Source: Octopus sinensis
Taxonomy: Eukaryota
Length of the DNA: 64,000 bases
Direction of reading: 5' to 3'
Assembly: GCF_006345805.1 (NCBI RefSeq)
Contig: NC_042997.1
Span: 59,272,001-59,336,000 of the forward strand
Within the stretch, counting starts at the first letter, position 1, and every line of letters begins with the position of its first letter. The notes under the pieces were generated by a model. That model was not told the DNA's origin and searched no databases. It worked only from the letters and a program-made list of their open reading frames with translations. This document shows, piece after piece, positions 1-60,531 of this stretch. The position numbers and the translations under genes were made by a program.

Positions 1-2202
1 AGGCAAGGTAAAACATGTCAAAATGATGATAAATTTTATCATATATTTTCACTGTTGATAAATGTATCTGATGCTGAAAAAGAAATACAACTTGTGCATC
101 TTACATGTAGTTAGGCATAGTCCTTGAAAAGTAAAGTTATAATTCAAAATAGACTTTCTACCTTGTCACAGAAAGTTTGTGTGATTTTGTAACAGGAGCA
201 TTTAAGCCTTTTACATGATTTCAAAACAAAATATATCCGAGGAAAATCTTTCATTTGGAATAAATTTAGGTATGTATGTAAGCATAAATATGAGTATATT
301 TACACACACTTCATATAAACTGTCTTGGATTGAAGGCCTTGAGACTACAAAGAGAACTTAGTGACCACAATAATATAATATTGTTAGAGGATGGCTTGTA
401 ATTCTAAAATTCCAAGTTACAAATACTACTATATACCTTTAGCCTAAACTAGCCAAATCAGGCCCAAATATTCAACCTGTTTTAAGTTCAAAATGGCCAG
501 ATCCAGCCTCTCACACCTACAGTGTAATGTCATTCTAAAAATAAACAATCTCATCATTAAAATCTTGAAGCTGAGATAATGTATGATCAATTCAAAACAA
601 TGTCAATAAATATTACGTTTGACAGAATAATCTAAACGATAAAGGAATATACATAAATAAATGCTAAACATTGTGCATGTATTCATTGAAGACTGCTGCA
701 GTGCAAACCTATAACTGAGTGCACATTAGACTAAGCATATATTGTGTGCAGTATATCATGTACAATCAAATATATCAAATAATATAACTAAAGAAGTATG
801 TTCAAAACTAAAATAGTGAAATTTGGGAAAAGCAGGCTGAGAAAATTATATAAGGAAACAACTCAAACAAGTACATATTTACAAAAGTATACTCACACAC
901 ACATACCACTCCCACAATATAACCCTAGATAATGTATTTATGTAGTTGGTACAAAATCCTAAACATGTCACAGAATGTAAGGCAAACAGGGTTGTATTTC
1001 CTGATGAAAATATTTTACAAGAAAGGCCAGTGATTCTGAAACAAACTCTCTTCTACTTATATGTTAGCATATTTATGTTGTCCTCCCACAGAATATATTG
1101 GTCTCAAATTTTGACACAAGCCAGCAAATTTGGGGGAGGGGGTAAGTTTATTATATCGACTTCAGTGCTCAACTGGTATTTATTTTATCAACTCCAAAAG
1201 GATGAGAGGCAATGTTGACCTGGGTGGAATTTGAACCTAGAATGTTAAGATGGATGAAATACCACTAAGCATTTTGCCCAGCATGCTAAGATTCTGCCAG
1301 CCCACTGCATAACTTACCCACAGAAAATAGTGATCACAATAACACATAGAGATGTCAAAGTAGGGCTATATATAAATATATATGTACTTGAATACAAACC
1401 CTAGCTGCTCTTTTATATACACACACACACACGAACGTGTTGACAAATGGAAGGAAGTGGCACTCAACACATTTTGTAGAAGTTACATTTTTAATAGCAG
1501 CTTGTCTCAGCTTCATATGAGTTAAAAATCTATGAGCATGTCCATCTTATCAGTAAAATGGAAGATGAGATAAATTCAAGATAGCTTCTAGATGTTAGGC
1601 TTCGATTGGTCAGCTCAGGTCACACGGTATTAATGCCGGTGTTACTTCCACATCATTAATGCTGTGACCTGGGATGACCAAAATAGAGGCCTGATATTTA
1701 GAAGCTATCTTCAATATGTCTTAATCTGTAACTCTTCTGATATGTTGAGATGGATGCATCCTATATGCCCACAAAACATTCAAGCCATATGGACATTCGT
1801 CAAACTGTTATTAATATATATATAAATACTCACAATATATACCAGTGTTGTAGTGCTCTAACACAAATTACCAAGCTAATGATAATAATAATCATATGAA
1901 TAACAACAACAACAACAATAATAATAAGTCAGTTATTATTGTAAAAAGATTATATAAAAAAAAAATTCTGTACAGTTACTGTACAATTTGCACAATATTT
2001 ACAAAGTTATATTTAACCACATGGAAATTTAGAATTTTAGAAAGAAAAAAACAAAACAAAACAAAAATAAAAACTAAAGGATTCACTGAAAAAAAAAATA
2101 CTCAGTAAAACTGCCTGACAACCATATATACGAAATGTCACTTACTGTATTTGGTCTGGTAACATGAAGCTTGCAAGGTTTACTTATGATATACACATAT
2201 AA

Positions 2203-2337
2203 TGATGTATATATATATATATACATACACATATATACATACATATATATATACATACATATATATATACACATACATATATATATATATATACACACAC
2301 ATGCATATATATATACACACATATATATATAATATAA

Positions 2338-2373
<36 letters not shown>
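2203..2373. repeat. (TA)n/(CA)n compound microsatellite (similar tracts at 3080..3375, 22272..22311, 49088..49240, 49415..49593, 62263..62371, 63240..63362)
   Basis: Read directly. Confidence 0.95.
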
Positions 2374-2379
<6 letters not shown>

Positions 2380-2933: not shown

Positions 2934-5900
2934 TATGCATGCTGATATATGACTGACGTTGGACTCCTCATTCGTATAATCACTGAACCTGGAGCTAAAC
3001 TATAGTCTATCCATAGCACTTATTCAGCATTAACTGACACCTTTGGGTCTTTTTGACACCATTTACCTCTCATAATCTCTCTCTCTCTATATATATATAT
3101 ACATATATGGACAATATATATACACACACATACACATATAATCATGATGATGATGTATATATATACATACATATATGGATATATATACATACATATATGG
3201 ATATATATACATACATATATGGATATATATACATACATATATGAATATATATACATATATACACACACATATACATATATGGATATATATATACATACAC
3301 ACACACATACATATATGTATAGATATATATAAATATGCATAGATACACATCTATATACACACACACACATATACAGCATACAATTGACAGAAAGTACAAC
3401 TTTTGTCTTTTCTAATATTTTTTTACACACATTTTTCAAAATTTATTTTTTCAAAACCTTATATAAATATCATTGAAGAAAGATGTTTTGTATCAGGAAG
3501 CACAGTTTTTTTTTTAATTAACTTTATTATTGTGGAAATATTTTTTGTTTGTTTTTACAAGAGTCGAGGCAGTATGGAGGTGGAGTAGAGAAGAAAAAAA
3601 TATATAATTGGTTCCTGGGGGTTAAAAATTAGTTGGGAAATGATAATGTATTAATGGAAAATGGGAGATATTAATAATAAAATAAAAATATAAATTTGCA
3701 AAGTCAATAGCGACTCCACATTGAATTTGAAATGAAATGGAGTCCTTAGATTCAATTAAAGCTGAGTTTATTAGATTTCAATTTTCAAATTTTTTTTTTA
3801 TTAAAACTGATGTTGACCAACTCTGGCAAAAGATATAGTTTTAGGTTCATAGAGAAGCCCACCTACAATTTAAGTCCAGCACATGTTGAAGGCTAATTAC
3901 CAATGAGGATGATGAGAATGATGATGACGATGATTATGATGATGATAATGAAAATGACAATGATAGTGGTTGTGATGTTGAAGATATCGAACCCATGTAT
4001 CATAAATTCATTCATTCTCCCACCCAAGCCATAAAGATAGAAAAAAAAATTGTTTTTATAGTGGACTGTTAGAGTTAGTATGCCTGCCCATAAAAAAAAA
4101 AGTCACCTCCATGCTTGTTTGCTATTTATCTGGTAGGCACTGTGTCTCCATTTGGTAAGAATGAGAAATCTCTGGTTCCAAACAGACTGTACAACTCGTG
4201 AGCTATCAATAACAACAAACAAAAATAAAAAAGACAAAATACCATTCCTAAACAAGTTAGGATTATTGCAACAGCTGGCCAGAGCTGTTTTTGTCTAGAG
4301 CTTTTTTGCAACCTGGTGACACCCATCCTTTTTTGCCAGACCAAGACAAACAAGCACGAAGCACTTTTCCTAAGGACAGTACAAAGCTTATGATGAAATC
4401 CGAACTCATTATTCATGAGGTGAGAGGCACACCAGATCCACTAAGGTGTTACAACCTCTAAAGACTACAGAAATAATAACTACTAATAGTAAATAATGGA
4501 AGAATATAAGATTTCTCTCATTTCTGCTCCTTTCAAAAAGTCTTTCTTATCAAACAATGCTGTTTAGGATAGAAGCAGCCAAACTGACTAAAAATATGTA
4601 TTAGGAATGAAGAGGAAAAATCTTTTATTCAATCATTGCACTGTCAGAAGAAAATATAAAAATTTTTCTAAATGGATAACTGATATTAAAAAAAAAATGA
4701 ATAAAATAGTCACACACACACATTTATATGCAAACATACATGGTAACTCTTTGGAGAAAGGAAAAGCATTAAAAAAATTTAAATTTAAAAATACATTTAA
4801 AAATCTCAACCCATATTCTTCTGTTTCAATAATCAGGGGAAAAAGATCTTTCAAATATATAAATACTCACATACATTCTTTACCCACCCATGCTTAAATG
4901 CAAATAAGCTTAAAAGTTTCAAATATTAAAAAAGAAAAATAAATAAAAATTAGAAAAAAAAAAGCTTTTAAATACTATAAATACTTTCACACTTAACTCA
5001 CTCCCCTTTTAAATGCAAATAAACATAACAATTCCAAATAAAGGAAGGAAAAGAAAAAGCACTTTATGTATGACCATAAAAAAGTTTTGAGCTGATATTA
5101 AAGATAATTATACAAGGCAACTGTGATGTTAATTGGTGATTATGAGAAGTTTTTTGTAATGTTTCTTTTGTGTTTATGTTTTGCATGTGGACGTGACTTG
5201 GTTAGGGTAAAATGGAATTACACAAAAAAAAGGGAATGGGGAGAAAACCTGTACAGTTTGCACTGACAGTGTTACGCACAACTGAAATGCGTATATACAC
5301 ACATACCCATAATGCTGGTGATCACAAGTACTTCAAAACCTTTGCATTAGATTTCAGAGTCACTTTGTTTTGTTTTGTATTTCCTAGCAACATCATCACA
5401 AATGATCATAGAAAGAGAAATATATAAAAATACCTGAATGGGTCAAATCTGAGAATGTAGCACAATTAGCAAGCCATCTGAGCATAGTGCTTCAGTCCAG
5501 ATCCCAACTAGGGTGTTAGTTCAGCCCCTCCTCCTCATACCACCATACAAGTTCAACAGCTTTCCACTTTCCCCACCTTTCTAGGTAAAAGTTTTTAAAT
5601 GTTTAATTCATACAGTCGTAGTAATACTACAAATAATAATGGTTTATTTTCTCTTGGCACAAGGCCAAATTTGTAGGAAGGAAGGGTATAGTTGACTGAA
5701 TAACCCACAATGTGTCATTTGGTCCTGATGAGATGAAAGGCAAAGCTGATCCTAGTTAGATTTGAGCTTAGAACAAGGCATTGAAGTGATACCAAAAGCA
5801 GCCTATCCAGCTCTCTCAAGCAACTGCACATTACTATTTTCAGTAACAGCAGTGATATAACAATAATGATTTCTGAAAGCCTTGAATTTATTGAAAGAGA

Positions 5901-6526
5901 GGAAAATGAATGTGGAAAGAGAAATGCCTTTTCCTTGATCCTTTATGATGGAAATGAAACCAGGATGCACATGTAGTTCTTTGAGAACCAAATTCTGCAG
6001 CTATGGCACTCATGACATTACATAATAATGATAATAGTAATTCTTTGAATAGGCATTAGCCCAAATTTTATTCATTCCTAATATTGTAAGTAATTATTTC
6101 ATCAACACTTACAGGATTTGAACTTTGAAAAGAGAGATACCAAATCCAACATTTAAAGCATCTCTTCCAGTGCTTTACCGTCTTTAATAATAATAATAAT
6201 TTTTCTCAAGATACATCTCCAGTACTTTGTAGGAAAAGTATAGGGTTGAGCTGAGATTTAACTGACACCAGTAAAATTACATGTAGTTCATATTTTACAC
6301 CCCATCCCACCCCACTAGGGATGAAAGGCAAAGCCAACTTTGGTGGGATTTGACCCCAGAGCCAAGACAGCTTTTAGCCAAGTGATACTACCACTGTCCT
6401 GGCCATTGCCTTTAATTGTCCTTTATGAGAGCCATGGAAGGGAAGGTAAAAAAAAATTAAATGTGGTGAACAAGGTCAAGTGGAGGGAGAGTAGGGCATT
6501 GTATCAAACACAATGAGGTTGCTATA

Positions 6527-7803
6527 TTAATACTGGTTTTGGTTGTAAGAGTAACCTGTCTGACCTTGACTAGACATCTGGCTATTAGGCATGTGTGACT
6601 GACCACTGTTGCTACTTCCACCACCACTGCTATTACTGTTGCTGCCAACACCACCGCTGCCACCACCACCACCACCACCTCCACCACCTGCCCCGCTAAC
6701 ACTGTTGCTCATACTATTTGACTGTTGCATTGAATTACTTCCTGACACTGGCATTTGGTTTTGTCCACCCATTTGATTGCTGTTGGGATTCATTTGTCCA
6801 CCACCACTAGGCCCCATCGGACCAGACATAGAAACTGGAGTAACAGACATAGAACCAGGAGGACCAGACATGGAAACAGGAGGACCAGACATAGAAACTG
6901 GTGGACCAGACATGGAAACAGGTGGACCAGACATTGGACCTGCTGGACCAGACATGGGTCCTGGTGGACCAGACATAGGACCTGGTGGTCCAGACATGGG
7001 GCCTGGTGGCCCAGACATAGAACCTGGTGGGCCAGACATTGAACCAGGAGGACCAGACATAGATCCTGGTGGGCCTTGCATGGATCCTGGTGGACCTTGC
7101 ATGGGACCAGGTGGGCCTTGCATGGACCCTGGGGGACCTTGCATAGAACCAGGTGGGCCTTGCATGGATCCTGGTGGACCTTGCATAGATCCTGGTGGGC
7201 CTTGCATGGAACTTGGTGGGCCCTGCATAGAGCCAGGTGGGCCCTGCATGCCTCCAGGAGGACCTTGCATGCCTCCAGGAGGACCTTGCATACCTCCAGG
7301 AGGACCTTGCATACCTCCAGGTGGACCTTGCATACCTCCAGGTGGACCCTGCATACCTCCAGGTGGACCTTGCATACCTCCAGGTGGACCTTGCATGCCA
7401 CCAGGTGGACCTTGCATGCCACCAGGTGGACCTTGCATACCACCAGGTGGACCTTGCATGCCACCGGGTGGACCCTGCATGCCTCCGGGTGGACCCTGCA
7501 TAGAACCAGGTGGACCTTGCATGGAACCAGGTGGAAGAGGTCCAGAAGGTGGCATACCTGGTGGACCCTGAGGAGGTCTATTATAGGGGTTATAGCGTGT
7601 TTGAGATTGACCACCGCCAGGATAGTTTGTGTACTGTGACTGTGGAGACATGTTGGGTCCAGGTGCTGGACCTCCACCAGGTCCTGGAGCTTGACTGTAA
7701 CCTGGTTGTTGAGTGTAAGACTGCTGTCCTTGACCCTGAGTGTATGGTGGCTGTGAATTATACTGCTGCTGGGCATAAGCTTGCTGCTGACCATACTGCT
7801 GGC
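6527..7803 (-). CDS. SS18: SS18 terminal coding exon 7, including the heptad repeat and poly-Gly; ends YSYNQNQY*
   Basis: Polypyrimidine tract plus gacag acceptor at 7804; open to TAA at 6529..6527 (ORF 6527..7810). Confidence 0.9.
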
Positions 7804-10800
7804 CTGTCAAGAGAAAAAAAGTATTGCATTAAGATAAATTTGATCAGCAAAAGTTCATTCTCAATGGGTTGACACATCATCTACATAAAATTTTGCATTT
7901 TTACAACATACTCCAAATAAATATTGATATCTTGGAACAAGTTTGTTATTTCTAAAATAATTATGTCACAGTTACTCAATGAATCAGAGACACTCTTAAG
8001 AATTAGAATTTACTTTTTCTAACAGCTAGGGCATAAAAGTTCACCAGAGTGAGGTACAACTGTCTTGTTTGATGAGATCCAGTGGAAGCAGGTTTTCAAC
8101 TTATGATTCATGCAGGTACTTGTTTAAACAAAGTGACAGTGCATTTAATGTTGAAATGAACAACTCGTGCAAAACTTTGCTTTTCTTTCTTTTTAAAACA
8201 ATTTCTAATCTAATCATCAGTTCAAAATTCACTGCCACCTCCATCAACTTTTAAACAATATAATGTTGTCTATTAAGAAATCTTCAAATTCCTGCATCCT
8301 TTTTAATTAAGGATATAAATACTAGTCAAGAGAAATCAAATTTGGTAATATGAAATTATAGCATAAACATATTTCTTTTAACTCAAACTAAGTTTAATTC
8401 AGGATACTAGAATTAAGCAAAAGATTTTACCACCTCAATATTTTCTGTAAACAAACAATAATACTTAAGTTTCTAAGAATGAAGGAGAAGAACTAGCAGT
8501 TTTTCCACTATAGTTAAATATACTTGACTCTATATAGCTATACAGTTTTTAATCATTTCTTCAGGAGGAAAGGGCATTGACCATGACCTTTTACAGGATC
8601 CCCAAGACAGTAAAAGGAATGGCTACAACAGAGTGGATTGTGCAAAAAGCATACAAAGACCAGGAGATATTGTGAAAGTAGGCAATAGATTCAATCTACC
8701 ACTCATGTAGACCACAACAGGATTTGAATTCTGAATGCAAGAAACCAGAACGCATAACACAAGGCATCCCATTTGACATTCCAATGATTCTGCCAGTCCA
8801 CTGCCCAAGACTGGGAGTTTTTTGTTAACTCCAGAAGATGAGTGGCAAAGTTGACCGTTGCAAAATTTGAATTCAGAGCAAAAAAAGCTGGAATAAGTAC
8901 TGCAAAGCATTTTGTCTGGTGCTAACAGCCAATTTATTGCCTATAAAACATTAGATTTAATCTGTGAAATGATTGCATTACTGCCAATCTCTAGGGTATA
9001 TTTCCATACCCAAAACATACAGAGTAGAAGACTGTAATAGAGACTTAAATAGAGTAATACACTTGATATGCGAATATCTGTGCTACAGAAAATTTAGGGG
9101 CAAAATTATGGGGACAAAGTAAATTTAAAGGAGGATGGTTTGTTTATTATTAACTTTATATGACTGCTTACTCTTTCTTTCCCACAAGTTACAAGGATAT
9201 ATAACTCAGCAATAAGAGAAAAGACATAGTGACAAGAGAGAATGAAAATAGACCAAAGACTTGTCTCTGAACTTATTTTTAATTTGATTCCAGTTGAATA
9301 ATTGCAAGTAACTAGCTAAATACTAACAGAAAATAAAAATATTCCAAAATTTCTCAATAAAATCACTTAGGGTTAGTGGGTTTTGATGGAAAGGGAAAAA
9401 TAAAAAGACAGTTAAATAACACACTTCCGAAAATGTGTAAAAAAAAAAGTTTCTGAAAGTGTCTTTCACCTTGCATATTGAGCCTACCCTGAGATGGTGA
9501 TCTCCTATAGGCATTGGGTGGTGGCATTGCTCGTGATCCCATTGGTTGATTTGAAGGTGGCGGTCCTGGAGAAGGCCCACTCATCATAGGATTGTTGCCA
9601 GCTTGACTCTGTTGCATCATTGACTGCTGTGGTGGCATAGCCTGACCCTGAGACATTCCTGGAGGAGCTGAAGAAGATTGTGACATCATAGGTTGTTGAG
9701 GACCTGGATAACCCTGTGGACTTTGGGGAGGAGGCCCTTGTTGCTGTTGAGACATAGGTGGACCGTAGCCAGGTTGATTGTTCATAGCATTTGGAGTATT
9801 CATTGGAGGACCTACAAAAAACATTTAAAAATACCAATAATGCATAGTTTACTAATATATATGTACACAGACAGACAACTAATTTGTTAGATCAAAACAA
9901 TAATTTTTTCTTTGTTTACATTGACTCTATTTATTAACAACCTGTAATAGTTGATCTTTAAGCTACCATAATCTATTCTTAGGTTAATGATGAGTATATC
10001 AATAATTACATTCTTCCACCAAAATGCCAAAACTATATATACAATCAAAGAATCAGACACATGGATTGGATGATTTGTGTTTGGAAAAATGCTCGAAGGA
10101 GCTAGTAGTGGCAAGGGAAGAGAATCTAGAGTATTTAGGTGAAGATGTTGAATTCAAAAGAATTAACATATAGTATGTACAAATTGTAGAAAAAAAGAAA
10201 TAAAAAAAACAACCAAATTCTAAAACAATCACAACAAAGAAAATTATTTAAAATTTGACAAGATGATATTGTTTATATTTTCCCTGAGATATTCAACAAC
10301 TCACAAAATCAGAAACACCAAATTTAGAATTACCTGCACGTGATTTTCCTTGTGTCATCATAGCTTGCTGTTGTTGATTCATTTGTGGCCGAGAATAGCC
10401 TGACATAGACTGCTGAGGTCCATTGTAACCAGGTTGGCCACCAGCAGATGTCATTGGCATACCAGTACTACCTGTTATGTAAGAGTTTAGAGGTCATTTA
10501 CAGTTTTACCACAAACAAATTTATTGGGCTAGAGTCAGAATAAACAAAAATATAACAAGTACAGAGTATACTTTCTATGACTTTTTATTCTTTCTTCTTG
10601 ATTTATATCCATTCTTCCATAGTACCGTGGCTGGATTTAATTTCGTATATTTATTCTCGAACAACTAATCCTTAAAGCTAGAATGTTTTCCAATAAATCG
10701 CTCATTAACTGTATGTATTAGTTGACACAAGAGTTAATGACTTTGATTGGGTTGGTGCATAATTAATGACCAGTTTTTTTTTATCAATTGTAAATTAAGT

Positions 10801-13800: not shown

Positions 13801-16800
13801 CTACTTGGGGCCAAGTTATATTTTTCGATATAGGTCATAAACAAATGATTGTTGGAAAAGGGTCTTGTACTTTTTGGGGGTGGGGGAAGAAGAGGGGCAG
13901 GTAGATTAAGGCAAACAGTTTTACCTTGAAATAAAAGCACAATGGCTGTAACATTGCTTGAGCTGAGTTATAGCCTCACAATAACTGAGCAACATTACTT
14001 AAAGCAAAAAACAAAAACTGACCTGGTGGCGGGGCATTCATTTGGTTTGGAGGCATATTTCCTGGCCTTGGCATCTGATTCATGGGAGCTGAGTTATTAG
14101 GAGGAGGTCCACCAGGGTTTTGCCCTCCAGGCATACCTTGGTTGGGATTTACCTGACCAGGAGCCTAAATATATAAAAGTTTAGTCATAATCATAGACTC
14201 AATGCATTCATTAATGAACAAAATTAAACAACATAAACAAGTACTCGCTGTTTGGTTTGTTTTACTGCTTTACATTGCCATAAAAGTTCAGTGATAAAAC
14301 AGTTATGTCCCTTACATCTTCTAGGGGAACCATGTTACTTTAAAGAAAAAAAAACCTGGAACTTTATCATAACAGTTTAATCAATTTAAAGTTATCTATT
14401 ACTGAAACAAACTGAACGAAATTCTAAGACCAGACAAATCTGATATTTCAATAATCTGTTAAGAAATACAAGTATATCCTGACTACTATCAATTCTGAAC
14501 TTAATCCTAGTAACCTAGAGATTTTGTCCCTATATACTGGTCTTAATGAAGAATATTTAAGGGGCAAACTTTAATAATTTGCTGCAGTAAAAACTTAAAA
14601 CTTGGAGTACATATATTTTCTGTGGCAATTTGGTTTCTCATCCTTGTACTCCATGCCAGGCTAAAACTACTGTTCGTCAAAAGTGTAAAAGAATAGGATA
14701 TTGGTTTATTGAATACCAGTCTATTGGTCACACCTCTTTTGACTCACAAATCTTAAATCTATTTCTCTAGCAAATAAATGTTCTAAACCTTCTATGATAA
14801 CAGTGATAAATTAATGAGAAACCAGTTGAAATGTAAATATATATACATAGAATGTGTATTAATATACATACATAATAACAAGTTATTTAATGGGGGGAAA
14901 TGTTGCAAGTGCTTAATTACAAAATAGTTATATCCCTTACAATTCCCATTACCACCAAGCCAGCAATAGTAGGTAAAATTATGTCACTTTTATATTACAT
15001 AAGGCAGTGGCTCTCAAAAGAAGTTATTAATGGAAACAAAACAGAGTTTGCATCCACATAATTCTTCTTTCTTCATCATGGCATTGAATAAATTTAAGAA
15101 GAAACTATCTTAATGTTATTAGACATTTGTTCACCCCTTTTCAATCCTTACAGTTCCTCTACTATGCGAAACACTGGTCTAAGGATATCTGGAACTATCT
15201 TTATCACAGCAACACACAATTTGCCATATTATCATGGATGGAATGATGTTGGTCTTTTTTCATACATCCAAACGCTCACAACTTGGTGAAATCCTTCTTA
15301 TATCTCCCTTTTAAAGACTCAACTGTAAAATATTTGTACCTATTATTAAGAAAAACATCTGAAGCAAGTAGAGATCATGAGCCTTGCCTTCAGTGGGGAG
15401 TATAACACAATACCCATCAGTATTATACTATATACCATCATAATCTTTATACCTCTTTTAACAAAGCTACAAGAAAGTTTTGTTATTCACAAACATACTG
15501 CCACTAAAATGAATCTGATAATGTAAGTTCTGTAGATCATTAATAGAATTACTCACTATGAAATAATTTATAGCCAATACTGGAAATTATACAAGTGGTT
15601 GTTTCTGTATTTTGTGTATAACACAAACTCTCCCATGTGTAATTTAAGAGATAAATTCTCACGCACAAAGACTCACAAAGCAATTCTTTAATTTAGACTC
15701 TGTATCACTGGATAGAGGCATTGTAGTATTGTTTCCTTTAGCACTAGACTGCCAGTCTGGTGGTAGTTGCAACTAACCTCCACTTAGACATACACACACA
15801 GATTAATAACAATCATTGTTTTTAGTGGACCTAGACTAATATTGTTAGCCTAACTACCTCCTTATATGGTGAGAACATGTGTCTAGATGAGCAGAAATTC
15901 AGAGTAAACATTAAACAGAGTAAGAGGGACTCTAGATTTTTCAACAGATGATCTTTTTAGTTTTGGAGGTACTGAAAAAATGCACCCAGTCTATGCTGTA
16001 AAATGGTAATAGAAAGGGCATCCAATCGCTAAAAACCATACCAGAAAAAAAAAGAAAAGAAACAACAAATGAAGGAGATGCAGTATAGAAAGAACTCTTC
16101 ATTCTTGGTAGATATGGCACAATACACCAGTTGGTACTGTGAAATAGTTGAAGATATCCAGCTGGATACCTTTGCTAAAATCATGGCATAAAGAAAAAGA
16201 TGGTTGGTTTTTAATAGTGTGTGTACCACATGATGAAAAAGCATGACAAGTAGCAAGAGACTCTGAGACCCATTCAACTCCATGTTAGCATTGAAAAGTA
16301 AACTTAAATGATATATATATATAATATATATATATATATATTATTATGTTGGGTTCCTTGAGTGCTACTGGTAACATTTAATCCAGTACAACCTGTCGTA
16401 AGGTCAGGTTGTTGGCGACTAAACAGGCAACCCCACCAGGCTTGCTTGGTGAGGAGGGTGTTGTTGGACACCTTGCGGGATGAAAAATAAGACCTGTGAA
16501 AGGGTGGAGGAACTCCTGAGCAGTCAATGGCCATCCAACAAAATATCTGTAAATATTTATATATCTTTTCCCCCCATTATATGTATATATATTATTTATA
16601 TTTAAATCTTACTTTATTTATATTTTTCAATTGCATCTTTTCTTATTCACATACCGTACTTTTCTTTTTTTTCTTATATGTATATTTTTACTTTTATATA
16701 CATATTTATATTTTTAAACTGCATATCTTTTACTTTTTTATATTCATATATATTATTTATATTTGCAAATCACATCGTACTTTTCTTCTTTTCTTATGTA

Positions 16801-19800
16801 TGAATGAGCTACTCCGTGCCGGTCACTGGAGTGATATTTGAGTGTTGGTTTGGTGTCTGGAATGACACCAAATGACTACCTCATGGGCAGGTAGAATCTC
16901 TTTAACCGAGGCTGGTAATCTACCTAGAAGGAAAGCTCTGAAATAAAACCTGAGGCCTCGGAAGCTCCTGGTTTTGTCAATTTTCATGTCACACCGGCAA
17001 AAGTCTTCTTAGGCTAACAGGTGGGAGTAGTGCAGTGCAAGCTACACCCACTGAAAATTAGTCATCTGCACAGGTACTTCCTGTACACCAGATCTTAGTA
17101 AAGTCATTGAATTGGTTGGTTGGCAGAAACCTAACAATGCACTTGTAACTTATTCTAAAATGTCTCTCAGAGATTCAGTAAATGGCAAAAAAGTCTTGGG
17201 AACATCAGAGGAACAGGTTTGGCTTGGCAGGTGTCCCAGTGTATTACAGGCTGGGCCAGGTCGTCATCCTGCCACTGTGGTCAAATAATCTTCAAGAAAA
17301 CGTAAAAATAAATGTCCTTTGAATTTTGGCTGTTGGAATGTGCACACATCAGATGCCATGATGGTTGTAAAGTGTAGGTACAGGAGGTGGTCAATCTCTG
17401 CATAAGGAGTAGACAACCACCATATATACATATATATATAGGCCTGCCTAGCCAGCAGGGTGGCATATTCAAAAGCTAAAACAAGGCAAAGTGTATTGTG
17501 ACCAGCAGTGTATAACAACATCTGATAGTCTGGTGATATACATATATATATTATTAGAAATTACAAAGTGACTCAAAGGTCAAGAGTTTCATTTACAGCA
17601 CTTTCCTGTCACCAACCCTCACCTGTTTCTCTTTGGCCAGACATGTTTCAGCAGGATTCTGGAAATTATAATATTCATTTATAACAATCATGCAATGTCA
17701 AGACAAGGAGACATAAACACACACACACAATGGGTTTCTTTCAATTTCTAAGACCCAAACCCACTCACAAGGCTTTGACTGACTTGGCGCTTAGGTAGTA
17801 AAAGACATGTGCCCAAAGTCCAAGGTACCATGCAGTGGAACTGAATCTGAAACAAAATGGTTGGCATGCAAACTTTTTAACCACACAGCCACACCTGCAC
17901 AAATGTGTGTGTGTGTGTGTGTGTGTGTTTGATAATGAACAGAATAGGATAAAGACAAAGCCTAGACTTACAGGTAGTACTGCCTGAACATTTACATTGG
18001 AATCAGCAACAGTTGCCAAATAGACAAGGTTCCGGTGCAGCATCACTTGGTATCTAAAATAAACAGTTGCAAAGTAAGTCTGCATCAAATATTACTAAAG
18101 CCTTTCTTAATCAAAGAAACATACCAGCTGTTCAACATCATGCCAACAGTTTTACCACCAAAAACAAATGTTCTGTTTTGTTTATTATTTAAGTTAATGT
18201 GTGATTTAACCCTTTAACAATCAGATTACTGTCGAATGTAATGCTTATGTATTCACAAAATTTTACAAATTAAACATGTATTATTTTGTAGCTTCAGAAT
18301 AATGTAATAATTATTTTTAGGATAACATTGTAGGATAGGTGTGAGAGGCTGGATCTGGCTGGCTTGAACACAGAACAGGTGTACGATTTGTGCAGGATAT
18401 GGCAGTAAAGGTGCTAAAGGGCTAAACCATCTTTCAGAAGGTTTGCAATACTAAAATACACTGCATCATTTAACTGAGTAAATAATAAAAGAAAAGAGTA
18501 AAATTGTCAACCAACTATAAAATCATGGATATCTAAATGATGTAAAAGTGGTACATTTCTAAAATTAACATTTTTAAAACCAAACCAGAATCTATTAGTT
18601 GCAATCTAAATTGTATTTCAAGTGAAAATAACAAAAATTTATGTAATTTATATATTTGCTAATGATCTGTTTTGTACACACACACCTCATTTAAAAAACA
18701 ATAAGCAAGATTCAAGTTAGAAAGGGCTCAAACTGCAAAGAAATCATCATCATCAAGATTATCATATAATGTCCATTTTTTCATGCTTGTATAGGTTGGA
18801 CAGAATTTGTTGAGGCTGATTTTCTTCAACCTGATACCTTTCCTGTTGCCAGCCTTTGCTTGCTTCCCATGACGAGACATGTTTTCATAGAAAATTTGAA
18901 CTGAAGGACACTGCTTGTAAGATGTAGACATCAAAGCAAAGAGGGAATAACACACACACATACATGATGGGCTTGTTTCAGTTTTCATATACTAAATCCA
19001 CTCACATATTGTTGCTGGATCTGCTACAGGTAGAGATGAAACCATACTTTCGTGAATGACAGCAGAACATATTCAACAATGTATTTGCTTGTACCAGAAG
19101 TAAATTACCATTAGGTGGTCATGGCTGTGTTAATAATGGAATGTATTCATAACAGAAGAGACCAAAAGAAACTTAGAACTAATTCAGACTCATGAGCAGT
19201 AGGCTTAAAAAAACAAAAAAGCATCCAGCTGTAGAAACCAAGCCAAATCAGACTGGAGCCTGGTGCAGCTCTCTGGATTACCAGCATGGGAAACAGAGGC
19301 TAAATGATGATGATGATTTCATTTTAAATTTATGCAGTTAAAAATGGAAGAAAAAAAGAAAAAAAAAGAAGCTTACTGTGCACATTCTGAAGCTCGACCC
19401 TTGTTTTGGTAATCAAGAATAGCCTGTATCAACTGTATGTTTTCATCAAGCATCTACAAAAGGAAAAATTTGATGAGTAAAAACAAAAAGATATTTTATA
19501 GAGGAATTATCCCAGACTGGCATAGACACTCTTGATCTCTTTCTCACCTATTACCAGTGCCACATTGCAACTACCCAACACGCAGTCACATACTAGACAG
19601 AATCCTATGGCATTACAAAGCAGATGACTGGCCAAAACTCTTATCAGTTTTATGCCAAATATTCCTAGCAGCACATGTGCTTCACTTCTGAGCCATCAAA
19701 AGTAAAGCTAGACTGGTAACTGAAACTATTGTTTTTAGGCATGTCCCACATACAAGAAGAATCCAGTGCCTGAATTTTCCTTCATAGCTGCAGAATAGCT

Positions 19801-31300: not shown

Positions 31301-32809
31301 ATATATATATGGCTTGAGATATGTGCGCCTGTACACATACATCAAAGAACACACGTATGCCTTTATATATAAATGAACAGATTTTTCTAAAGATCATGCT
31401 TCTAAGTCCTCATTTAATAGGAATGTTCTCAAGATTTATGCTTATGTATATATGATAATCACAACATTAACAACAAAGTCGATACCTTCGTGCAATATGG
31501 AAGCAAATTCATAGAAACTGCGAGACTTTATTTCATTCCTTCTTTCGTTATCATTCGTGTTTACGATAACCTCAAGCAAGTCGGTTTTAGGCCTAATTAC
31601 AATCTGCTCTCCGTTTTGTTGACAACCAGAATTAGGGAGAAAGGATTTTACTTATTATATAATACACAGTATGACATTCATGAGCATATTTCATTCATGA
31701 TACTAGATTAAGTAACCCCGACTATGTGCAAAACACTAAACGGATCTTAGGCCTGTTACCATGAATAGAGAGCAAGCCATAGCTATTTTGCATAAGGGTT
31801 GGTTGATGTGACATGCATTACATACATACACACACTACAAGGATTCAATATAACAGCCGCCTATCTACCACATGACGTAGGATGTGAACAAAATGTTAAG
31901 CGTATAATGGAGACAAAATGAAGGACGAGAAAGAAAGCTCCTTGTCGAGGTAGCCGAAGTTCAGCAGAAATCTTAAGGGTCAAAATGCTTACTGTTTGAA
32001 TATACAATGTAGGTGGGCAAGTTAAGAGACATAATGCGGAAGATATAGATTATTTCCATGGGAACTCATTAATCTAACTTAACATAGGTGGCAAATGATG
32101 ATGATGAGAAATGAAATATTCTTTTGCTTTTAATTTGAAAAATAAAACAGTTGGGGTGTAACTGGGACTGAAATGACCATTGAGAATGGGACATTTTTGT
32201 TTGTTTTCAGACAGCAATCTTTCAGGCAAAACAAATCATAGATACATAAATCGCAAGCTTTTTTGTTATGTTTTTATCGATAATATATCTATTGCGAAGA
32301 GCCAATTATGTGTGTTTAGAAGGTTACAGATCCGAAAATAACGAACAAGCCTTCCTTTTATGAGCAACACCACTCCAATTTTAAAACCAGTATGTATCGT
32401 AATATTTATAGGGATAACAGGAAACGAGATAATGAGATATTCATGTATTTTTGAAGATCAATAATAACGACGATAATGCAGTTGATAAAACACGATAGAT
32501 TTTTTCACAAATATAACTCAATATAAAAGAGGTCTATGAAAAAGAGACAACATTTAAATATAAACATGAAACCAGATGATATATTTCCATCGAGGATATA
32601 AAACTGAAATAAACCCAAAATATAAATACAAATATACATAACACAATATATATATATCTTACACAATTGCCTTAGTAAATAACGGGTGAAAAACACCGTG
32701 ATCACAAAAAGAAAAAAGAAATACTTACCTTTTGTATTGTGTTTGAATTTGGCGGTGGAGGTGGCTGAGCCTTTCCTTTCGGCTGTGATTGTACGAAAGT
32801 CAGCGACAT
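6527..32809 (-). CDS. SS18: SS18/SS18L1 (SYT/CREST) family BAF subunit, complete gene: join(32729..32809,19377..19453,17972..18053,14023..14164,10334..10471,9470..9811,6527..7803), 2139 nt = 712 aa + stop (706 aa with the alternative donor at 9488)
   Basis: Exons 1-3 give the SNH/SSXT domain (TIQK|MLDENIQLIQAILDYQNKGRASECAQ|YQVMLHRNLVYLATVADSN), which matches human SS18 (IQKMLDDNNHLIQCIMDSQNKGKTSECSQYQQMLHTNLVYLATIADSN). A long Q/P/G/Y/M-rich tail follows. Junction phases are consistent and the total length is divisible by 3. Invertebrates are expected to have one pro-ortholog of SS18 and SS18L1. Confidence 0.93.
6815..7528 (-). repeat. Coding 21-bp minisatellite: 34 heptads of consensus [GSV][GSP]M[QS]GPP
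   Basis: 714 nt = 34 x 21, read from the translation and the nucleotide period. Confidence 0.95.
9470..9811 (-). CDS. SS18: SS18 exon 6 (GPPMNTPNAMNNQPGYGPP...), with two in-frame donors (exon end 9488 or 9470)
   Basis: ttttgtag acceptor; open QPGY-type frame (ORF 9363..9824). Confidence 0.88.
10334..10471 (-). CDS. SS18: SS18 exon 5 (GSTGMPMTSAGG...TQGKSRA)
   Basis: aacag acceptor, 138 nt, GTAATT donor; phase 1/1, Q/P/G/M/Y composition. Confidence 0.85.
10747..10833. mobile_element. Mariner-derived mini-MITE (MADE1-like)
   Basis: 24-bp TIRs ttgggttggtgcataattaatgac / gtcattaattatgcaccaatccaa with one mismatch; TA on the right. Confidence 0.75.
11488..13505 (-). mobile_element. Decayed, 5'-truncated L1/Tx1-clade LINE (RT, C-terminal zinc knuckle, 3' UTR)
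   Basis: Frame fragments LDQSKAFCRVDH, RQGCHLSSLLYIMTLKPLL, YANN, GAKIN, CPR*AQNDQTILHALVQC; 3' end AATAAA followed by (TTA)n. Confidence 0.85.
14023..14164 (-). CDS. SS18: SS18 exon 4 (APGQVNPNQGMPGG...QMNAPPP)
   Basis: tatttag acceptor, 142 nt, GTCAGT donor; phase 0 in, phase 1 out. Confidence 0.88.
16330..17370 (+). mobile_element. Probable LINE (RTE-like) 5' UTR plus start of APE, interrupted by an AT-rich patch (16520..16800)
   Basis: KRKNKCPLNFGCWNVHT at about 17298..17348 matches the APE N-terminal WNVxT motif; hairpin-rich upstream region. Confidence 0.5.
17972..18053 (-). CDS. SS18: SS18 exon 3 (YQVMLHRNLVYLATVADSNVNVQAVLP)
   Basis: ttttag acceptor, 82 nt, GTAAGT donor; diagnostic LHxNLVYLA motif. 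Confidence 0.95.
18210..18421. mobile_element. piggyBac-type MITE (related copies at about 436..646 and, partial, 61423..61560)
   Basis: TTAA|CCCTTTAACA...TGCTAAAGGG|CTAA termini. Confidence 0.7.
19208..19318 (+). repeat. RTE family A 3'-tail repeat (other copies at about 20105..20260, 22125..22430, 40575..40760, 44613..44830, 54594..54900, 59419..59583)
   Basis: gcatccagc.gtagaaacc...ctggagcctggtgcagc...gttaaatgatgatgat shared with 60400..60531. Confidence 0.75.
19377..19453 (-). CDS. SS18: SS18 exon 2 (MLDENIQLIQAILDYQNKGRASECA-Q)
   Basis: tttgtag acceptor, 77 nt, GTAAGC donor; SNH domain. Confidence 0.95.
21555..21870 (-). mobile_element. SINE with tRNA-like head, CORE-like middle and LINE-like tail
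   Basis: Minus strand gaaggcatatggctc...gttcgattcc...tgtgttcttaggcaagacccttta. Confidence 0.6.
23065..25080 (+). mobile_element. Decayed hAT (Buster/Charlie-type) transposon
   Basis: ATG 23361 MDTFVKK; LSFGFT; BED-finger remnant CGKILINETIMPSKLHRRLTSKH; dimerisation motif NEYLHLSRKVVIVLLQFST...LRVCLSS; TIR-like agaggttctcaac at 23065. Confidence 0.78.
26491..26880 (+). mobile_element. tRNA-derived SINE family 1, dimeric copy (full unit plus headless second unit with a different tail)
   Basis: A box TGGCAGAAACG, B box GAGTTCAAATTCC; B box and core repeated at 26716..26830. Confidence 0.85.
28562..28704. repeat. Foldback of two SINE 3' tails (54-bp arms, 35-nt spacer)
   Basis: 48/54 identity by hand alignment. 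Confidence 0.85.
28890..29470 (+). mobile_element. Decayed CR1-clade RT fragment
   Basis: AIYLD..AFDNVSH, NGVPQCSP (29079..29102), YVHS..YATLISNPHMLDI..VE*VQRAF. Confidence 0.65.
32729..32809 (-). CDS. SS18: SS18 exon 1 (MSLTFVQSQPKGKAQPPPPPNSNTIQK)
   Basis: ATG at 32809, 81 nt, donor GTAAGT; ends in IQK like vertebrate exon 1. Confidence 0.9.
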
Positions 32810-56231
<23,422 letters not shown>

Positions 56232-59821: not shown

Positions 59822-60531
59822 TAGATGGCCTGTGTGAAAAAGTGCCACACCCTAGCGGTTGAGGGAACCTGTGGAAGAGGTAGACCCAGGAAAACCTGGG
59901 ACGAGGTGGTGAAGCACGACCTTCGAACTTTAGGTCTCACCGAGGAAATTACTAGAGACCGAGACCTTTGGAAGTATGCTGTGCGGGAGAAGACCCGGCA
60001 GGACAAGTGAGGCCATAATCCCGTGGCCTATACCTGGGATGTAGCCAGCCCACTTGTGCATTCCTTTCCTTCTTGGGACACAAAACTCCACTTGTGAAGA
60101 CCTGTTGAGGCAAGTGAATAATCAAAATCGTAATCTGTCAACATCAATGGAATTTGTAGCTGTGATACCAGTGCCGGTGATACGTAGGAGAACCATCCGA
60201 ACGTGGCCGTAGCCAGCGCCGCCCGGCTGGCATCCGTGCCGGTGGAACGTAAAAAGCACCATCCGACTGTGGCTGTTGCCAGCTTCGTCTGGTCCCCGTG
60301 CCGGTGGCACGTAAAAAGTACCATCCGATCATGGCCGTTTGCCAGCCTCGTCTGGCACCTGTGTCGGTGGCACATAAAAAGCACCCACTACACTCATGGA
60401 GTGGTTGGCGTTAGGAAGGGCATCCAGATCAGACTGGGCCTGGTGCAGCCTTCTGGCTTCCCAGACCCCAGTTGAACCGTCCAACCCATGCCAGCATGGA
60501 AAGTGGACGTTAAACAATGATGATGATGATG
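59822..60531 (+). mobile_element. RTE family A 3' end (ORF end, 3' UTR with ~63-bp tandem units, (GAT)n tail)
   Basis: VEGTCGRGRPRKTWDEVVKHDLRTLGL...*; ends gttaaacaatgatgatgatgat. Confidence 0.85.

What the first reader, a model, noticed from the sequence alone, without database searches (positions are those of the whole stretch)
6815..7528. 34x Met-periodic heptad array inserted in the low-complexity domain of a BAF subunit
Seen: 34 in-frame heptads with a polar gradient: 2 GSMQGPP, 12 identical GGMQGPP, 8 further xxMQGPP, then 12 xxMS(G/V)xx units. Met is at position 3 of every unit and there is no aromatic residue, whereas the flanks are Tyr-rich QPGY. Known: vertebrate SS18 has a QPGY domain whose tyrosines drive condensation, and it has no such ordered array to my knowledge; yeast Pbp1/ataxin-2 uses a Met-rich low-complexity domain for redox-switched phase separation. 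Inference: a lineage-specific, possibly length-polymorphic module giving octopus BAF a Met-based, oxidation-tunable condensate or multivalent docking surface.
Basis: partly seen in the sequence, partly recalled or inferred. Interest (0 to 1): 0.72.

Follow-up and report, generated by a model that had tools for sequence, protein, structure and literature searches.

The report
Methionine heptad array in cephalopod SS18
The last exon of a cephalopod SS18 (BAF chromatin-remodeller subunit) gene carries a real, translated-looking run of 34 seven-residue repeats with a methionine in each; two cuttlefish-type relatives lack it, so it is a lineage-specific stretching of a methionine-rich tail that molluscs already had, and its function is untested.

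Summary
On the minus strand, 6815-7528 encodes 34 in-frame heptads (2 GSMQGPP, 12 GGMQGPP, 8 xxMQGPP, 12 xxMSxxx) with Met at position 3 and no aromatic or charged residue.

The gene is an SS18 orthologue: 7 exons, 712 aa, Pfam SSXT E=9.6e-25, head-to-head with a proteasome alpha gene as in cuttlefish.

Two decapodiform loci (Acanthosepion pharaonis and an ENA contig) have only 'PPG[G/S]MGPGGPP' at the same spot. With the array removed, the exons align collinearly at about 80% identity. The array is therefore a lineage-specific expansion.

It is neither young nor an artefact. There are 30 DNA versions among 34 units, and the longest exact repeat is 41 bp. Variation sits at synonymous sites (pN/pS 0-0.35), which indicates selection on the peptide.

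It did not land in naive sequence. Mollusc SS18 tails after RYNPYNR are already Met-rich (7-13%), uncharged and almost aromatic-free. Other molluscs carry (QQPMMSQ)x7 in the central Met-rich region.

Nearly the same heptad (G[GN]MQGP[PQ]) recurs in teleost WDR33.

The proposed function (redox-tunable condensate) is untested. 'Octopus' is unproven, and hypervariable length looks unlikely.

Verdict: a new variant of a known kind, of moderate interest.

The parts
6815..7528 (-). 34 x 21-bp in-frame heptad array, residues 380-617 of the 712-aa protein
7067..7528 (-). Sub-array 1: 22 units xxMQGPP (2 GS, 12 GG, 8 mostly GS)
   Evidence: pN/pS 0.15, and 0 among the 12 GG units
6815..7066 (-). Sub-array 2: 12 units xxMSGPP (GS, GP, VS blocks; the last two units are degenerate). 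Ser codon 4 is always TCT, three nucleotide changes away from CAA (Gln)
7529..7803 (-). N-terminal part of the last exon: Tyr-rich QPGY segment ending ...RYNPYNRPPQGPPGMPPSGPLPP. Conserved with the decapodiforms
6530..6814 (-). C-terminal tail GGQMNPNSNQM...GYSYNQNQY, with a second window-specific Gly/Ser/Asn expansion. The terminal motif is conserved in the two decapodiform loci and Tubulanus, and is similar in Pecten, Patella and Lineus
6527..6529 (-). Stop codon of the SS18 orthologue
9470..9811 (-). Exon 6 of 7 (labelled E in the model): central Met-rich region, with a single QQPMMSQ copy. An alternative donor would remove RLNMQG
10334..10471 (-). Exon 5 (D)
14023..14164 (-). Exon 4 (C), start of the Met/Pro/Asn-rich region
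17972..18053 (-). Exon 3 (B), second half of the SNH/SSXT domain
19377..19453 (-). Exon 2 (A), first half of the SNH/SSXT domain
32729..32809 (-). Exon 1 coding part: MSLTFVQSQPKGKAQPPPPPNSNTIQK, followed by a GT donor
   Evidence: matches the cuttlefish N-terminus

Best explanation
The array is a translated, lineage-specific minisatellite expansion of 34 x 21 bp (238 aa, one third of the protein). It grew from a one-to-two-unit Pro-Gly-Met seed inside the ancestral C-terminal tail of a cephalopod SS18 orthologue, a tail that was already methionine-rich, uncharged and aromatic-poor.

Shown here:
- The exact anatomy of the array.
- The identity of the gene.
- Absence of the array at the homologous spot in two decapodiform cephalopods.
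- Old age of the units (near-saturated synonymous divergence).
- Purifying selection on the heptad peptide.

Inferred: the array forms no fold. It cannot be collagen, because Gly is not at every third residue. It cannot be a coiled coil, because it is 60% Gly and Pro. It most likely acts as a disordered extension of the SS18 low-complexity region. That extension would add 34 evenly spaced weak hydrophobic 'sticker' methionines on a Gly/Pro/Gln spacer. This would raise the valency and reach of SS18 self-association or co-condensation. It would also push the conserved terminal GYSYNQNQY motif further from the Tyr-rich QPGY core.
For: Anatomy and reading frame.

Gene identity: Pfam SSXT E=9.6e-25. 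Homologues are SS18/CREST across animals, the best being Acanthosepion SS18 at 75% identity. A conserved head-to-head proteasome-alpha neighbour is present.

Lineage specificity: cuttlefish locus L001 and ENA locus L002 read straight through '...SGPPPG[G/S]MGPGGPPGGQMNPGNNQM...GYSYNQNQY*' with no array. The window minus its array aligns collinearly with them at 80-82% identity.

Age and selection:
- 30 distinct DNA versions among 34 units.
- The 12 identical GGMQGPP peptides are encoded by 8 DNA versions that differ only at the six synonymous third positions (P=2.7e-4 if changes were random).
- pS is 0.41-0.54 and pN/pS is 0-0.35.
- Adjacent units show 69 synonymous versus 19 replacement codon differences.
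- Entropy at the third codon position is 1.10 against 0.45 and 0.40 at the first two.

Not an assembly artefact: there are no Ns and the longest exact repeat is 41 bp.

Ancestral context: mollusc tails after RYNPYNR have 7-13% Met and no charged residue, and their 3 aromatic residues lie in the terminal motif.

Disorder: AF2 mean pLDDT is 43.5 with no secondary structure. There is no Pfam match and no PDB match.

Family precedent: SS18 self-association and phase separation through its low-complexity domain is shown in PMC9117659. A Met-rich interaction domain is described for SS18L1 in PMC9420995.
Against: - No transcript, protein or population data were available, so translation of the array is inferred from codon-level selection and flank conservation only.
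- No other octopod-type sequence could be retrieved. The time and breadth of the expansion are therefore unknown.
- The constraint seen could be generic (keep the tail uncharged, non-aromatic and soluble) rather than a requirement for periodic Met.
- In vertebrate SS18, tyrosines, not methionines, were shown to drive condensation.
- The AF2 run used a single sequence, which is weak evidence.
Confidence: 0.55

Rival explanations
1. A tolerated, essentially neutral repeat expansion in a disordered tail. Replication slippage or unequal exchange stretched the seed. Selection only removes variants that introduce charge, aromatics, stops or frameshifts. The periodic Met has no role of its own.
For: - Low-complexity tails of SS18 orthologues vary widely in length among molluscs: 54, 88, 140 and 349 aa.
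- A second expansion (Gly/Ser/Asn) lies next to the array in the same tail.
- The exhaustive search found many unrelated proteins with Met-periodic heptad arrays, so such arrays arise easily.
Against: - Met is invariant in 34 of 34 units, and positions 5-7 (GPP) are nearly invariant, although synonymous sites are close to saturation.
- pN/pS is 0 in 12 units and 0.15 over 22 units, which is tighter than a merely compositional constraint would predict.
Confidence: 0.25
2. A multivalent docking platform. The 34 Pro-Gly-Met units would be short linear motifs read by a proline-recognition module (WW, GYF, SH3 or similar) of a nuclear partner, in the way Pro/Gly/Met-rich repeats of spliceosomal SmB/B' are read.
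For: - Regular spacing and near-identical units, as in known heptad platforms.
- Tandem WW domains of FBP21 gain affinity from multivalent proline-rich ligands (PMC4464085).
- Nearly the same heptad, G[GN]MQGP[PQ], occurs 9-17 times in the C-terminal half of teleost WDR33, another nuclear factor.
- A PPGM/PPGI element just upstream of the array is conserved in all three cephalopods.
Against: - FBP21-type ligands are proline-arginine-rich, and the array has no Arg or any charge.
- Array units read PPG-x-M, not PPG followed directly by a hydrophobic residue (the GYF consensus as I recall it, not tested).
- No partner is known, and the function of the WDR33 C-terminal half is itself unknown (PMC11331416).
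Confidence: 0.12
3. One reading: a redox switch. Reversible oxidation of the periodic methionines to the sulfoxide would dissolve or retune SS18/BAF condensates, as reported for the Met-rich low-complexity domain of yeast Pbp1/ataxin-2.
For: - 35 Met in 238 aa (14.7%) with no competing aromatic stickers.
- The Pbp1 precedent exists in the literature (Kato et al. 2019, seen only as a reference inside PMC10929184; the paper itself was not held).
Against: - Nothing in the sequence reports on redox behaviour.
- There is no homology to Pbp1.
- The Met-rich tail is ancestral in molluscs without periodicity, so Met richness alone does not single out this lineage.
- The Pbp1 domain is described, from my own knowledge, as forming labile cross-beta or helical contacts, which a tract with 60% Gly and Pro is unlikely to form.
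Confidence: 0.08
4. Not part of the protein: either an assembly artefact, or a segment removed from the mRNA (an exitron), so that the protein resembles the short decapodiform tail.
For: - The annotated cuttlefish models leave the last exon at exactly this position for a downstream exon.
- All six frames are open across the repeat.
Against: - There are no Ns, 30 distinct unit versions, and a longest exact repeat of 41 bp.
- Length is 714 = 34 x 21 bp, so the frame is kept between two conserved flanks.
- Variation is concentrated at third positions of this frame only.
- There is no GTRAGT donor and no polypyrimidine-AG acceptor inside the exon.
- The cuttlefish alternative terminal exon has no counterpart in the window.
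Confidence: 0.05

Closest known systems
SS18 / SS18L1 (CREST) family: SNH domain, central Met-rich region, C-terminal QPGY domain
   Same: - N-terminal SNH/SSXT domain.
- Met/Pro/Gln-rich middle region.
- Tyr-rich QPGY segment, with 21 Tyr in the whole protein.
- Conserved neighbour gene.
- The family's low-complexity region is known to self-associate (PMC9117659), and a Met-rich interaction domain is described for SS18L1 (PMC9420995).
   Different: - Vertebrate proteins are about 400 aa and end soon after the QPGY segment.
- Here a further 349 uncharged residues follow, 238 of them a regular heptad array.
- No vertebrate homologue retrieved shows an ordered array.
Decapodiform cephalopod SS18 (Acanthosepion pharaonis locus L001; ENA contig L002)
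   Same: - Same exon structure and same flanks (about 80% identity).
- Same terminal GYSYNQNQY motif.
- Same neighbour gene.
   Different: They have only 'G[G/S]MGPGGPP' where the window has 34 heptads. Their tail is 88 aa against 349 aa in the window.
(QQPMMSQ)n heptads in the central region of bivalve and gastropod SS18 (Tegillarca P0296, Haliotis P0009, Pecten P0037)
   Same: Ordered Met-containing 7-residue tandem repeats (7 copies) in the low-complexity part of the same protein family.
   Different: The unit is different, the position is different (central rather than C-terminal tail), and the array is five times shorter. The window has a single copy of that unit.
Teleost WDR33 C-terminal 'collagen-like' half
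   Same: Almost the same heptad: GGMQGPQ x17 (P0121) and GNMQGPP x9-12 (P0122), in a nuclear protein's disordered region.
   Different: The protein is unrelated (a WD40 CPSF subunit), so this is convergence, not homology. Its function is also unknown (PMC11331416).
Yeast Pbp1/ataxin-2 Met-rich low-complexity domain (redox-sensitive phase separation)
   Same: A Met-enriched low-complexity region in a protein that forms assemblies.
   Different: There is no sequence relationship. The Pbp1 domain is not a Pro/Gly heptad array. Redox behaviour was not testable here.

Membership tests
SS18/SSXT family (BAF subunit) | N-terminal SNH (SSXT) domain | tested here: met
   Pfam PF05030 at E=9.6e-25, 86.4 bits against a cut-off of 26.2, on residues 1-50 of the spliced model
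SS18/SSXT family (BAF subunit) | C-terminal Gln/Pro/Gly/Tyr-rich low-complexity domain | tested here: met
   The 94 residues before the array have Q21 P20 G16 Y10. The protein has 21 Tyr in all
SS18/SSXT family (BAF subunit) | Orthology to animal SS18 (best hits, synteny) | tested here: met
   Hits are SS18/CREST across metazoa. The proteasome-alpha neighbour is head-to-head, as at the cuttlefish locus
SS18/SSXT family (BAF subunit) | Physical incorporation into BAF via BRG1/BRM | not testable with these tools
   Inferred from SNH conservation only. Human SS18 residues 14-101 bind BRG1 (PMC9117659)
Collagen-like triple helix | Gly at every third residue (Gly-X-Y)n | tested here: not met
   The unit is 7 residues with Gly at positions 1, (2) and 5, so the spacing alternates 4 and 3. 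No Pfam collagen hit
Coiled-coil heptad repeat | Helical heptads with hydrophobic a/d positions | tested here: not met
   60% Gly and Pro, and one hydrophobic residue per unit. AF2 finds no helix, pLDDT 43.5
Coding minisatellite (in-frame VNTR) | Head-to-tail DNA units of a length divisible by 3 | tested here: met
   21-bp period, 34 copies, 0% indels
Coding minisatellite (in-frame VNTR) | Copy-number polymorphism among individuals | not testable with these tools
   No population data. The diverged units (longest exact repeat 41 bp) argue against hypervariability
Redox-switched Met-rich low-complexity domain (Pbp1 type) | Met enrichment in a low-complexity domain | tested here: met
   14.7% Met in the array and 12.3% in the tail
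Redox-switched Met-rich low-complexity domain (Pbp1 type) | Self-assembly that is reversed by Met oxidation | not testable with these tools
   Needs biochemistry
Proline-rich ligand of WW/GYF modules (Pro-Gly-Met type) | Consensus core with flanking Arg (FBP21 WW), or PPG followed directly by a hydrophobic residue (GYF) | tested here: inconclusive
   No Arg is present in the array, and units read PPG-x-M. FBP21 ligands are Pro-Arg-rich. The GYF consensus is recalled from memory. One PPGM just upstream of the array fits it

The most novel reading that the evidence does not exclude
G-x-M-Q-G-P-P heptads may be a functional module of nuclear low-complexity regions that evolved independently in a cephalopod BAF subunit (34 copies, under purifying selection) and in teleost WDR33 (9-17 copies). 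Periodic methionines on a polyproline-like spacer would then provide a tyrosine-independent, possibly oxidation-sensitive way of tuning condensate valency or recruiting a common reader.
Probability: 0.12. Interest if true: 0.65.

Novelty: new variant of a known kind. Interest (0 to 1): 0.36.

Why it matters
SS18 is the subunit whose low-complexity domain drives BAF and SS18-SSX condensation in vertebrates through tyrosines.

This cephalopod version keeps a short Tyr-rich core but adds a long, selected, Tyr-free array with periodic methionines. It is a natural experiment on which residues can serve as 'stickers' in a chromatin-remodeller tail.

It also gives a clean, datable example of a coding minisatellite that was retained under peptide-level selection. 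Independent appearance of nearly the same heptad in teleost WDR33 hints at a shared property.

In itself, though, a lineage-specific repeat expansion in a disordered tail is a common kind of event, and no function is shown.

Tried and rejected
1. Orthologues carrying the array. Three word-indexed searches and one exhaustive HMMER search of 1.84 billion representatives returned no protein with SS18 flanks plus an array. All strong hits to the array were unrelated heptad-repeat proteins (mucin-like, AHNAK-like, WDR33).

2. Exact look-ups. I tried the spliced 712- and 706-aa proteins, the ATG-started last-exon ORF, the exon E ORF and several transposon ORFs. None is in the collection. Neither the species nor transcript contigs could be identified.

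3. A JGI metagenome scan with the flank plus array start gave 445 pattern matches, none confirmed.

4. Collagen and coiled-coil readings were rejected from the Gly spacing and the Pro/Gly content.

5. A Pfam scan of the last exon gave nothing. A PDB sequence search with the array gave nothing.

6. The cuttlefish models' odd C-terminus (ATHGTTGTALLCYPPRDL) was checked as a possible conserved alternative exon. It has no counterpart in the window, so I treat it as cuttlefish-specific or an annotation quirk.

7. MAFFT misaligned the low-complexity tails. A global alignment after removing the array was used instead.

8. Literature searches for MQGPP and for SS18 plus cephalopod found nothing relevant. 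The Pbp1 paper was not held.

Full report
**1. What is in the sequence**

The feature is on the minus strand. Translating 6400-7810 in reverse complement gives one long open frame ending in a stop at 6527-6529.
- 2 GSMQGPP
- 12 GGMQGPP
- 8 more xxMQGPP (six GS, one SS, one GP)
- 12 xxMSxxx (three GS, four GP, three VS, then the degenerate GSMSVTP and VSMSGPM)

ATG is at codon 3 of every unit. The composition is G74 P70 M35 S30 Q22 V5 A1 T1, with no aromatic and no charged residue. Tandem Repeats Finder sees a 21-bp period with no indels and scores up to 489.

One detail is wrong. Only the N-terminal flank is Tyr-rich QPGY (10 Tyr in 94 aa). The C-terminal flank is Gly/Ser/Asn/Gln/Met-rich and has Tyr only in the final GYSYNQNQY.

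**2. The gene**

Reading the junctions gave a model with canonical AG/GT at every boundary:
- exon 1 coding part: 32729-32809
- then 19377-19453, 17972-18053, 14023-14164, 10334-10471, 9470-9811
- last exon: 6527-7803

The product is 712 aa, and the array is residues 380-617, one third of the protein.
- Pfam finds the SSXT/SNH domain at E=9.6e-25, and nothing in the last exon.
- Database homologues are SS18 and SS18L1/CREST from across animals. The best is SS18 of the cuttlefish Acanthosepion pharaonis, at 75% identity.
- Upstream and divergently oriented are exons of a proteasome alpha subunit: 35231-35347 and 37718-37885, matching Pfam Proteasome_A_N and Proteasome. The cuttlefish locus has the same arrangement.

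So the locus is the cephalopod SS18 orthologue. That it is a BAF subunit follows from homology only.

The species could not be fixed. No window-encoded protein is in the 15-billion-protein collection. The two decapodiform sequences are much closer to each other (146 of 162 aligned residues) than to the window (about 80%). An octopod is plausible but not shown.

**3. Is the array lineage-specific?**

I fetched the cuttlefish genomic locus (L001, GCA_903632075.3). I also fetched a second decapodiform-type contig from an ENA assembly (L002). In both, the last exon is one open frame that reads as follows, with no array:

...RYNPYNRPAP.GPPG[M/I]PPSGPPPG[G/S]MGPGGPPGGQMNPGNNQM...GQ.QPGYSYNQNQY*

After the 238 residues are deleted from the window's peptide, it aligns end to end with both at 80-82% identity. 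The array sits exactly where they have 'G[G/S]MGPGGPP'. The array therefore expanded from a seed of one to two units already present in the cephalopod ancestor. The alternative, loss in decapodiforms, is unlikely: scallop and limpet tails show no period-7 regularity, and the two nemertean tails show no such array on reading.

The annotated cuttlefish proteins leave the exon at this very point for an exon 4 kb downstream. That exon has no counterpart in the window. The read-through C-terminus, by contrast, is conserved or closely similar in scallop, limpet and nemertean orthologues. I take the read-through as the real end.

**4. Real, old and selected**

The window has no Ns. The 34 units occur in 30 different DNA versions, and the longest exact repeat in the region is 41 bp. 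A collapsed or inflated assembly is therefore unlikely.

Evidence for selection on the peptide:
- The 12 identical GGMQGPP peptides are written in 8 DNA versions that differ only at the six synonymous third positions. If changes fell at random, the chance that all six are synonymous is 2.7e-4.
- Pairwise synonymous difference among units is 0.41-0.54, close to saturation.
- pN/pS is 0 for the 12 GG units, 0.15 for the 22 MQ units, 0.27 for the 12 MS units and 0.35 overall.
- Neighbouring units differ by 69 synonymous and 19 replacement codons.
- Column entropy is 1.10 at third positions against 0.45 and 0.40 at the first two.

This pattern exists only in the GGMQGPP frame. It is good evidence that the array is translated in that frame and that the peptide, above all Met3 and G5-P6-P7, is under purifying selection.

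DNA identity falls from 0.85 between neighbours to 0.58 at a distance of 30 units.

The array is composite. The Gln codon (CAA/CAG) and the Ser codon (always TCT) at position 4 differ at all three bases, with no intermediate units. The MQ and MS blocks probably expanded separately.

Because the units are so diverged, strong copy-number instability is not expected. This remains untested.

**5. Context in the family**

Mollusc SS18 tails after the RYNPYNR anchor are already Met-rich and uncharged, and their 3 aromatic residues lie in the terminal motif:

| Taxon | Tail length (aa) | Met content |
|---|---|---|
| Limpet | 54 | 13% |
| Decapodiforms | 88 | 7-10% |
| Scallop | 140 | 12% |
| This window | 349 | 12% |

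What is new here is the length and the strict period of 7. Thirty-four Met-Met spacings equal exactly 7 here, against scattered spacings elsewhere.

The family is also known to have a central Met-rich domain (SS18L1; PMC9420995). In ark clam, abalone and scallop that central region contains seven tandem QQPMMSQ heptads, while the window has one copy. Ordered Met-containing heptads are thus a recurrent theme in lophotrochozoan SS18, at different positions.

Outside the family, the array's best named matches are teleost WDR33 proteins. Their C-terminal halves carry GGMQGPQ x17 or GNMQGPP x9-12. This is a striking convergence on almost the same heptad in another nuclear protein. The role of that half of WDR33 is unknown (PMC11331416).

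The exhaustive search also showed that Met-periodic heptad arrays occur in many unrelated proteins.

**6. How it probably works**

The array cannot be collagen-like, because Gly is not at every third residue. It cannot be a coiled coil, because it is 60% Gly and Pro. AlphaFold2 gives pLDDT 43.5 with no secondary structure (a single-sequence run, so weak evidence). No solved structure or Pfam family matches. Residues 364-712 contain no charged residue at all.

The best-supported reading is a disordered, uncharged extension of the SS18 low-complexity region in which evenly spaced methionines act as weak hydrophobic contacts on a Gly/Pro/Gln spacer. It would raise valency and reach for self-association or co-condensation.

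The precedent is that the SS18 low-complexity domain self-associates and phase-separates. In the human protein, however, the tyrosines do this (PMC9117659). This functional step is inference.

Rivals are:
- a tolerated neutral expansion under merely compositional constraint;
- a multivalent docking array for a proline-recognition module, weakened by the absence of Arg and by the PPG-x-M spacing;
- exclusion from the mRNA, made unlikely by the codon-level evidence and by the lack of strong splice signals in the exon.

**7. Verdict**

Gene identity and lineage specificity are supported.

Three points need amending. 'Inserted into the Tyr-rich domain' should become 'expanded from a seed within an ancestral Met-rich tail'. 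'Octopus' is unproven. The functional claims are untested.

No paper found mentions the array.

This is a new variant of a known kind: a repeat expansion in the low-complexity tail of a known protein family. What makes it more than routine is its size, its clear peptide-level selection and the convergence with teleost WDR33.

Noticed in passing
P0296 (Tegillarca), P0009 (Haliotis), P0037 (Pecten); the single copy in the window lies in exon 9470-9811: Other molluscs carry seven tandem QQPMMSQ heptads in the central Met-rich region of SS18. The window and the cuttlefish have only about one copy. Met-containing heptad arrays therefore arose more than once in this family.
   Followed up: partly
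P0121, P0122, P0124, P0131 (teleost WDR33): The C-terminal 'collagen-like' half of teleost WDR33 contains 9-17 tandem heptads G[GN]MQGP[PQH]. This is almost the same unit as here, in an unrelated nuclear protein whose C-terminal half has no known function.
   Followed up: partly
window 6590-6700 (minus strand): A second window-specific low-complexity expansion lies in the same tail: a run of ten Gly plus Ser/Asn-rich sequence (SGAGGGGGGGGGGSGGVGSNSNSSGGGSSNS), where decapodiforms have GSAGGGGSGSG. TRF sees a 3-bp CCA periodicity at 6645-6688.
   Followed up: partly
window 35231-35347 and 37718-37885 (+): Exons of a proteasome alpha subunit (Pfam Proteasome_A_N and Proteasome) lie head-to-head with SS18, as at the cuttlefish locus. 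From memory, human PSMA7-SS18L1 and PSMA8-SS18 are also neighbours, so the gene pair may be very old. Not checked here.
   Followed up: partly
window 14153-14164 and 9470-9487 (minus strand): Two small alternative splice choices annotated in cuttlefish isoforms (with or without APVQ at an acceptor, with or without RLNMQG at a donor) have matching alternative AG and GT sites in the window...GGTCAG|GTAAAT and ...CAGG|GTAGGC.
   Followed up: no
L001 25400-25450 and 29380-29433: All three annotated Acanthosepion SS18 isoforms leave the last exon inside the PPGGQM seed and end in ATHGTTGTALLCYPPRDL from an exon 4 kb downstream. They thereby drop the deeply conserved GYSYNQNQY end. This is probably a mis-annotation or a cuttlefish-specific isoform.
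   Followed up: partly
window 6815-7066 (minus strand): The position-4 Ser of all 12 MS units uses the same codon, TCT, although other fourfold sites vary freely. TCT differs from the Gln codon CAA at all three bases, and there are no intermediate units. Unexplained.
   Followed up: no
window 6530-7576 (protein residues 364-712): The last 349 residues contain no Lys, Arg, Asp or Glu. Standard tryptic proteomics would therefore never report this third of the protein.
   Followed up: no
window 39403-39897, 50405-50959, 53633-53986 (all minus strand): Transposon remnants lie upstream of the gene. One ORF has a weak DDE_3 transposase match, below the Pfam cut-off. Two ORFs match reverse transcriptase RVT_1, one of them followed by a PHD-like zinc finger.
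   Followed up: partly
window 2189-2379, 3088-3336, 49421-49605, 60167-60385: Long AT/TA dinucleotide microsatellites and a 62-bp tandem repeat of 2.5-3.5 copies.
   Followed up: no
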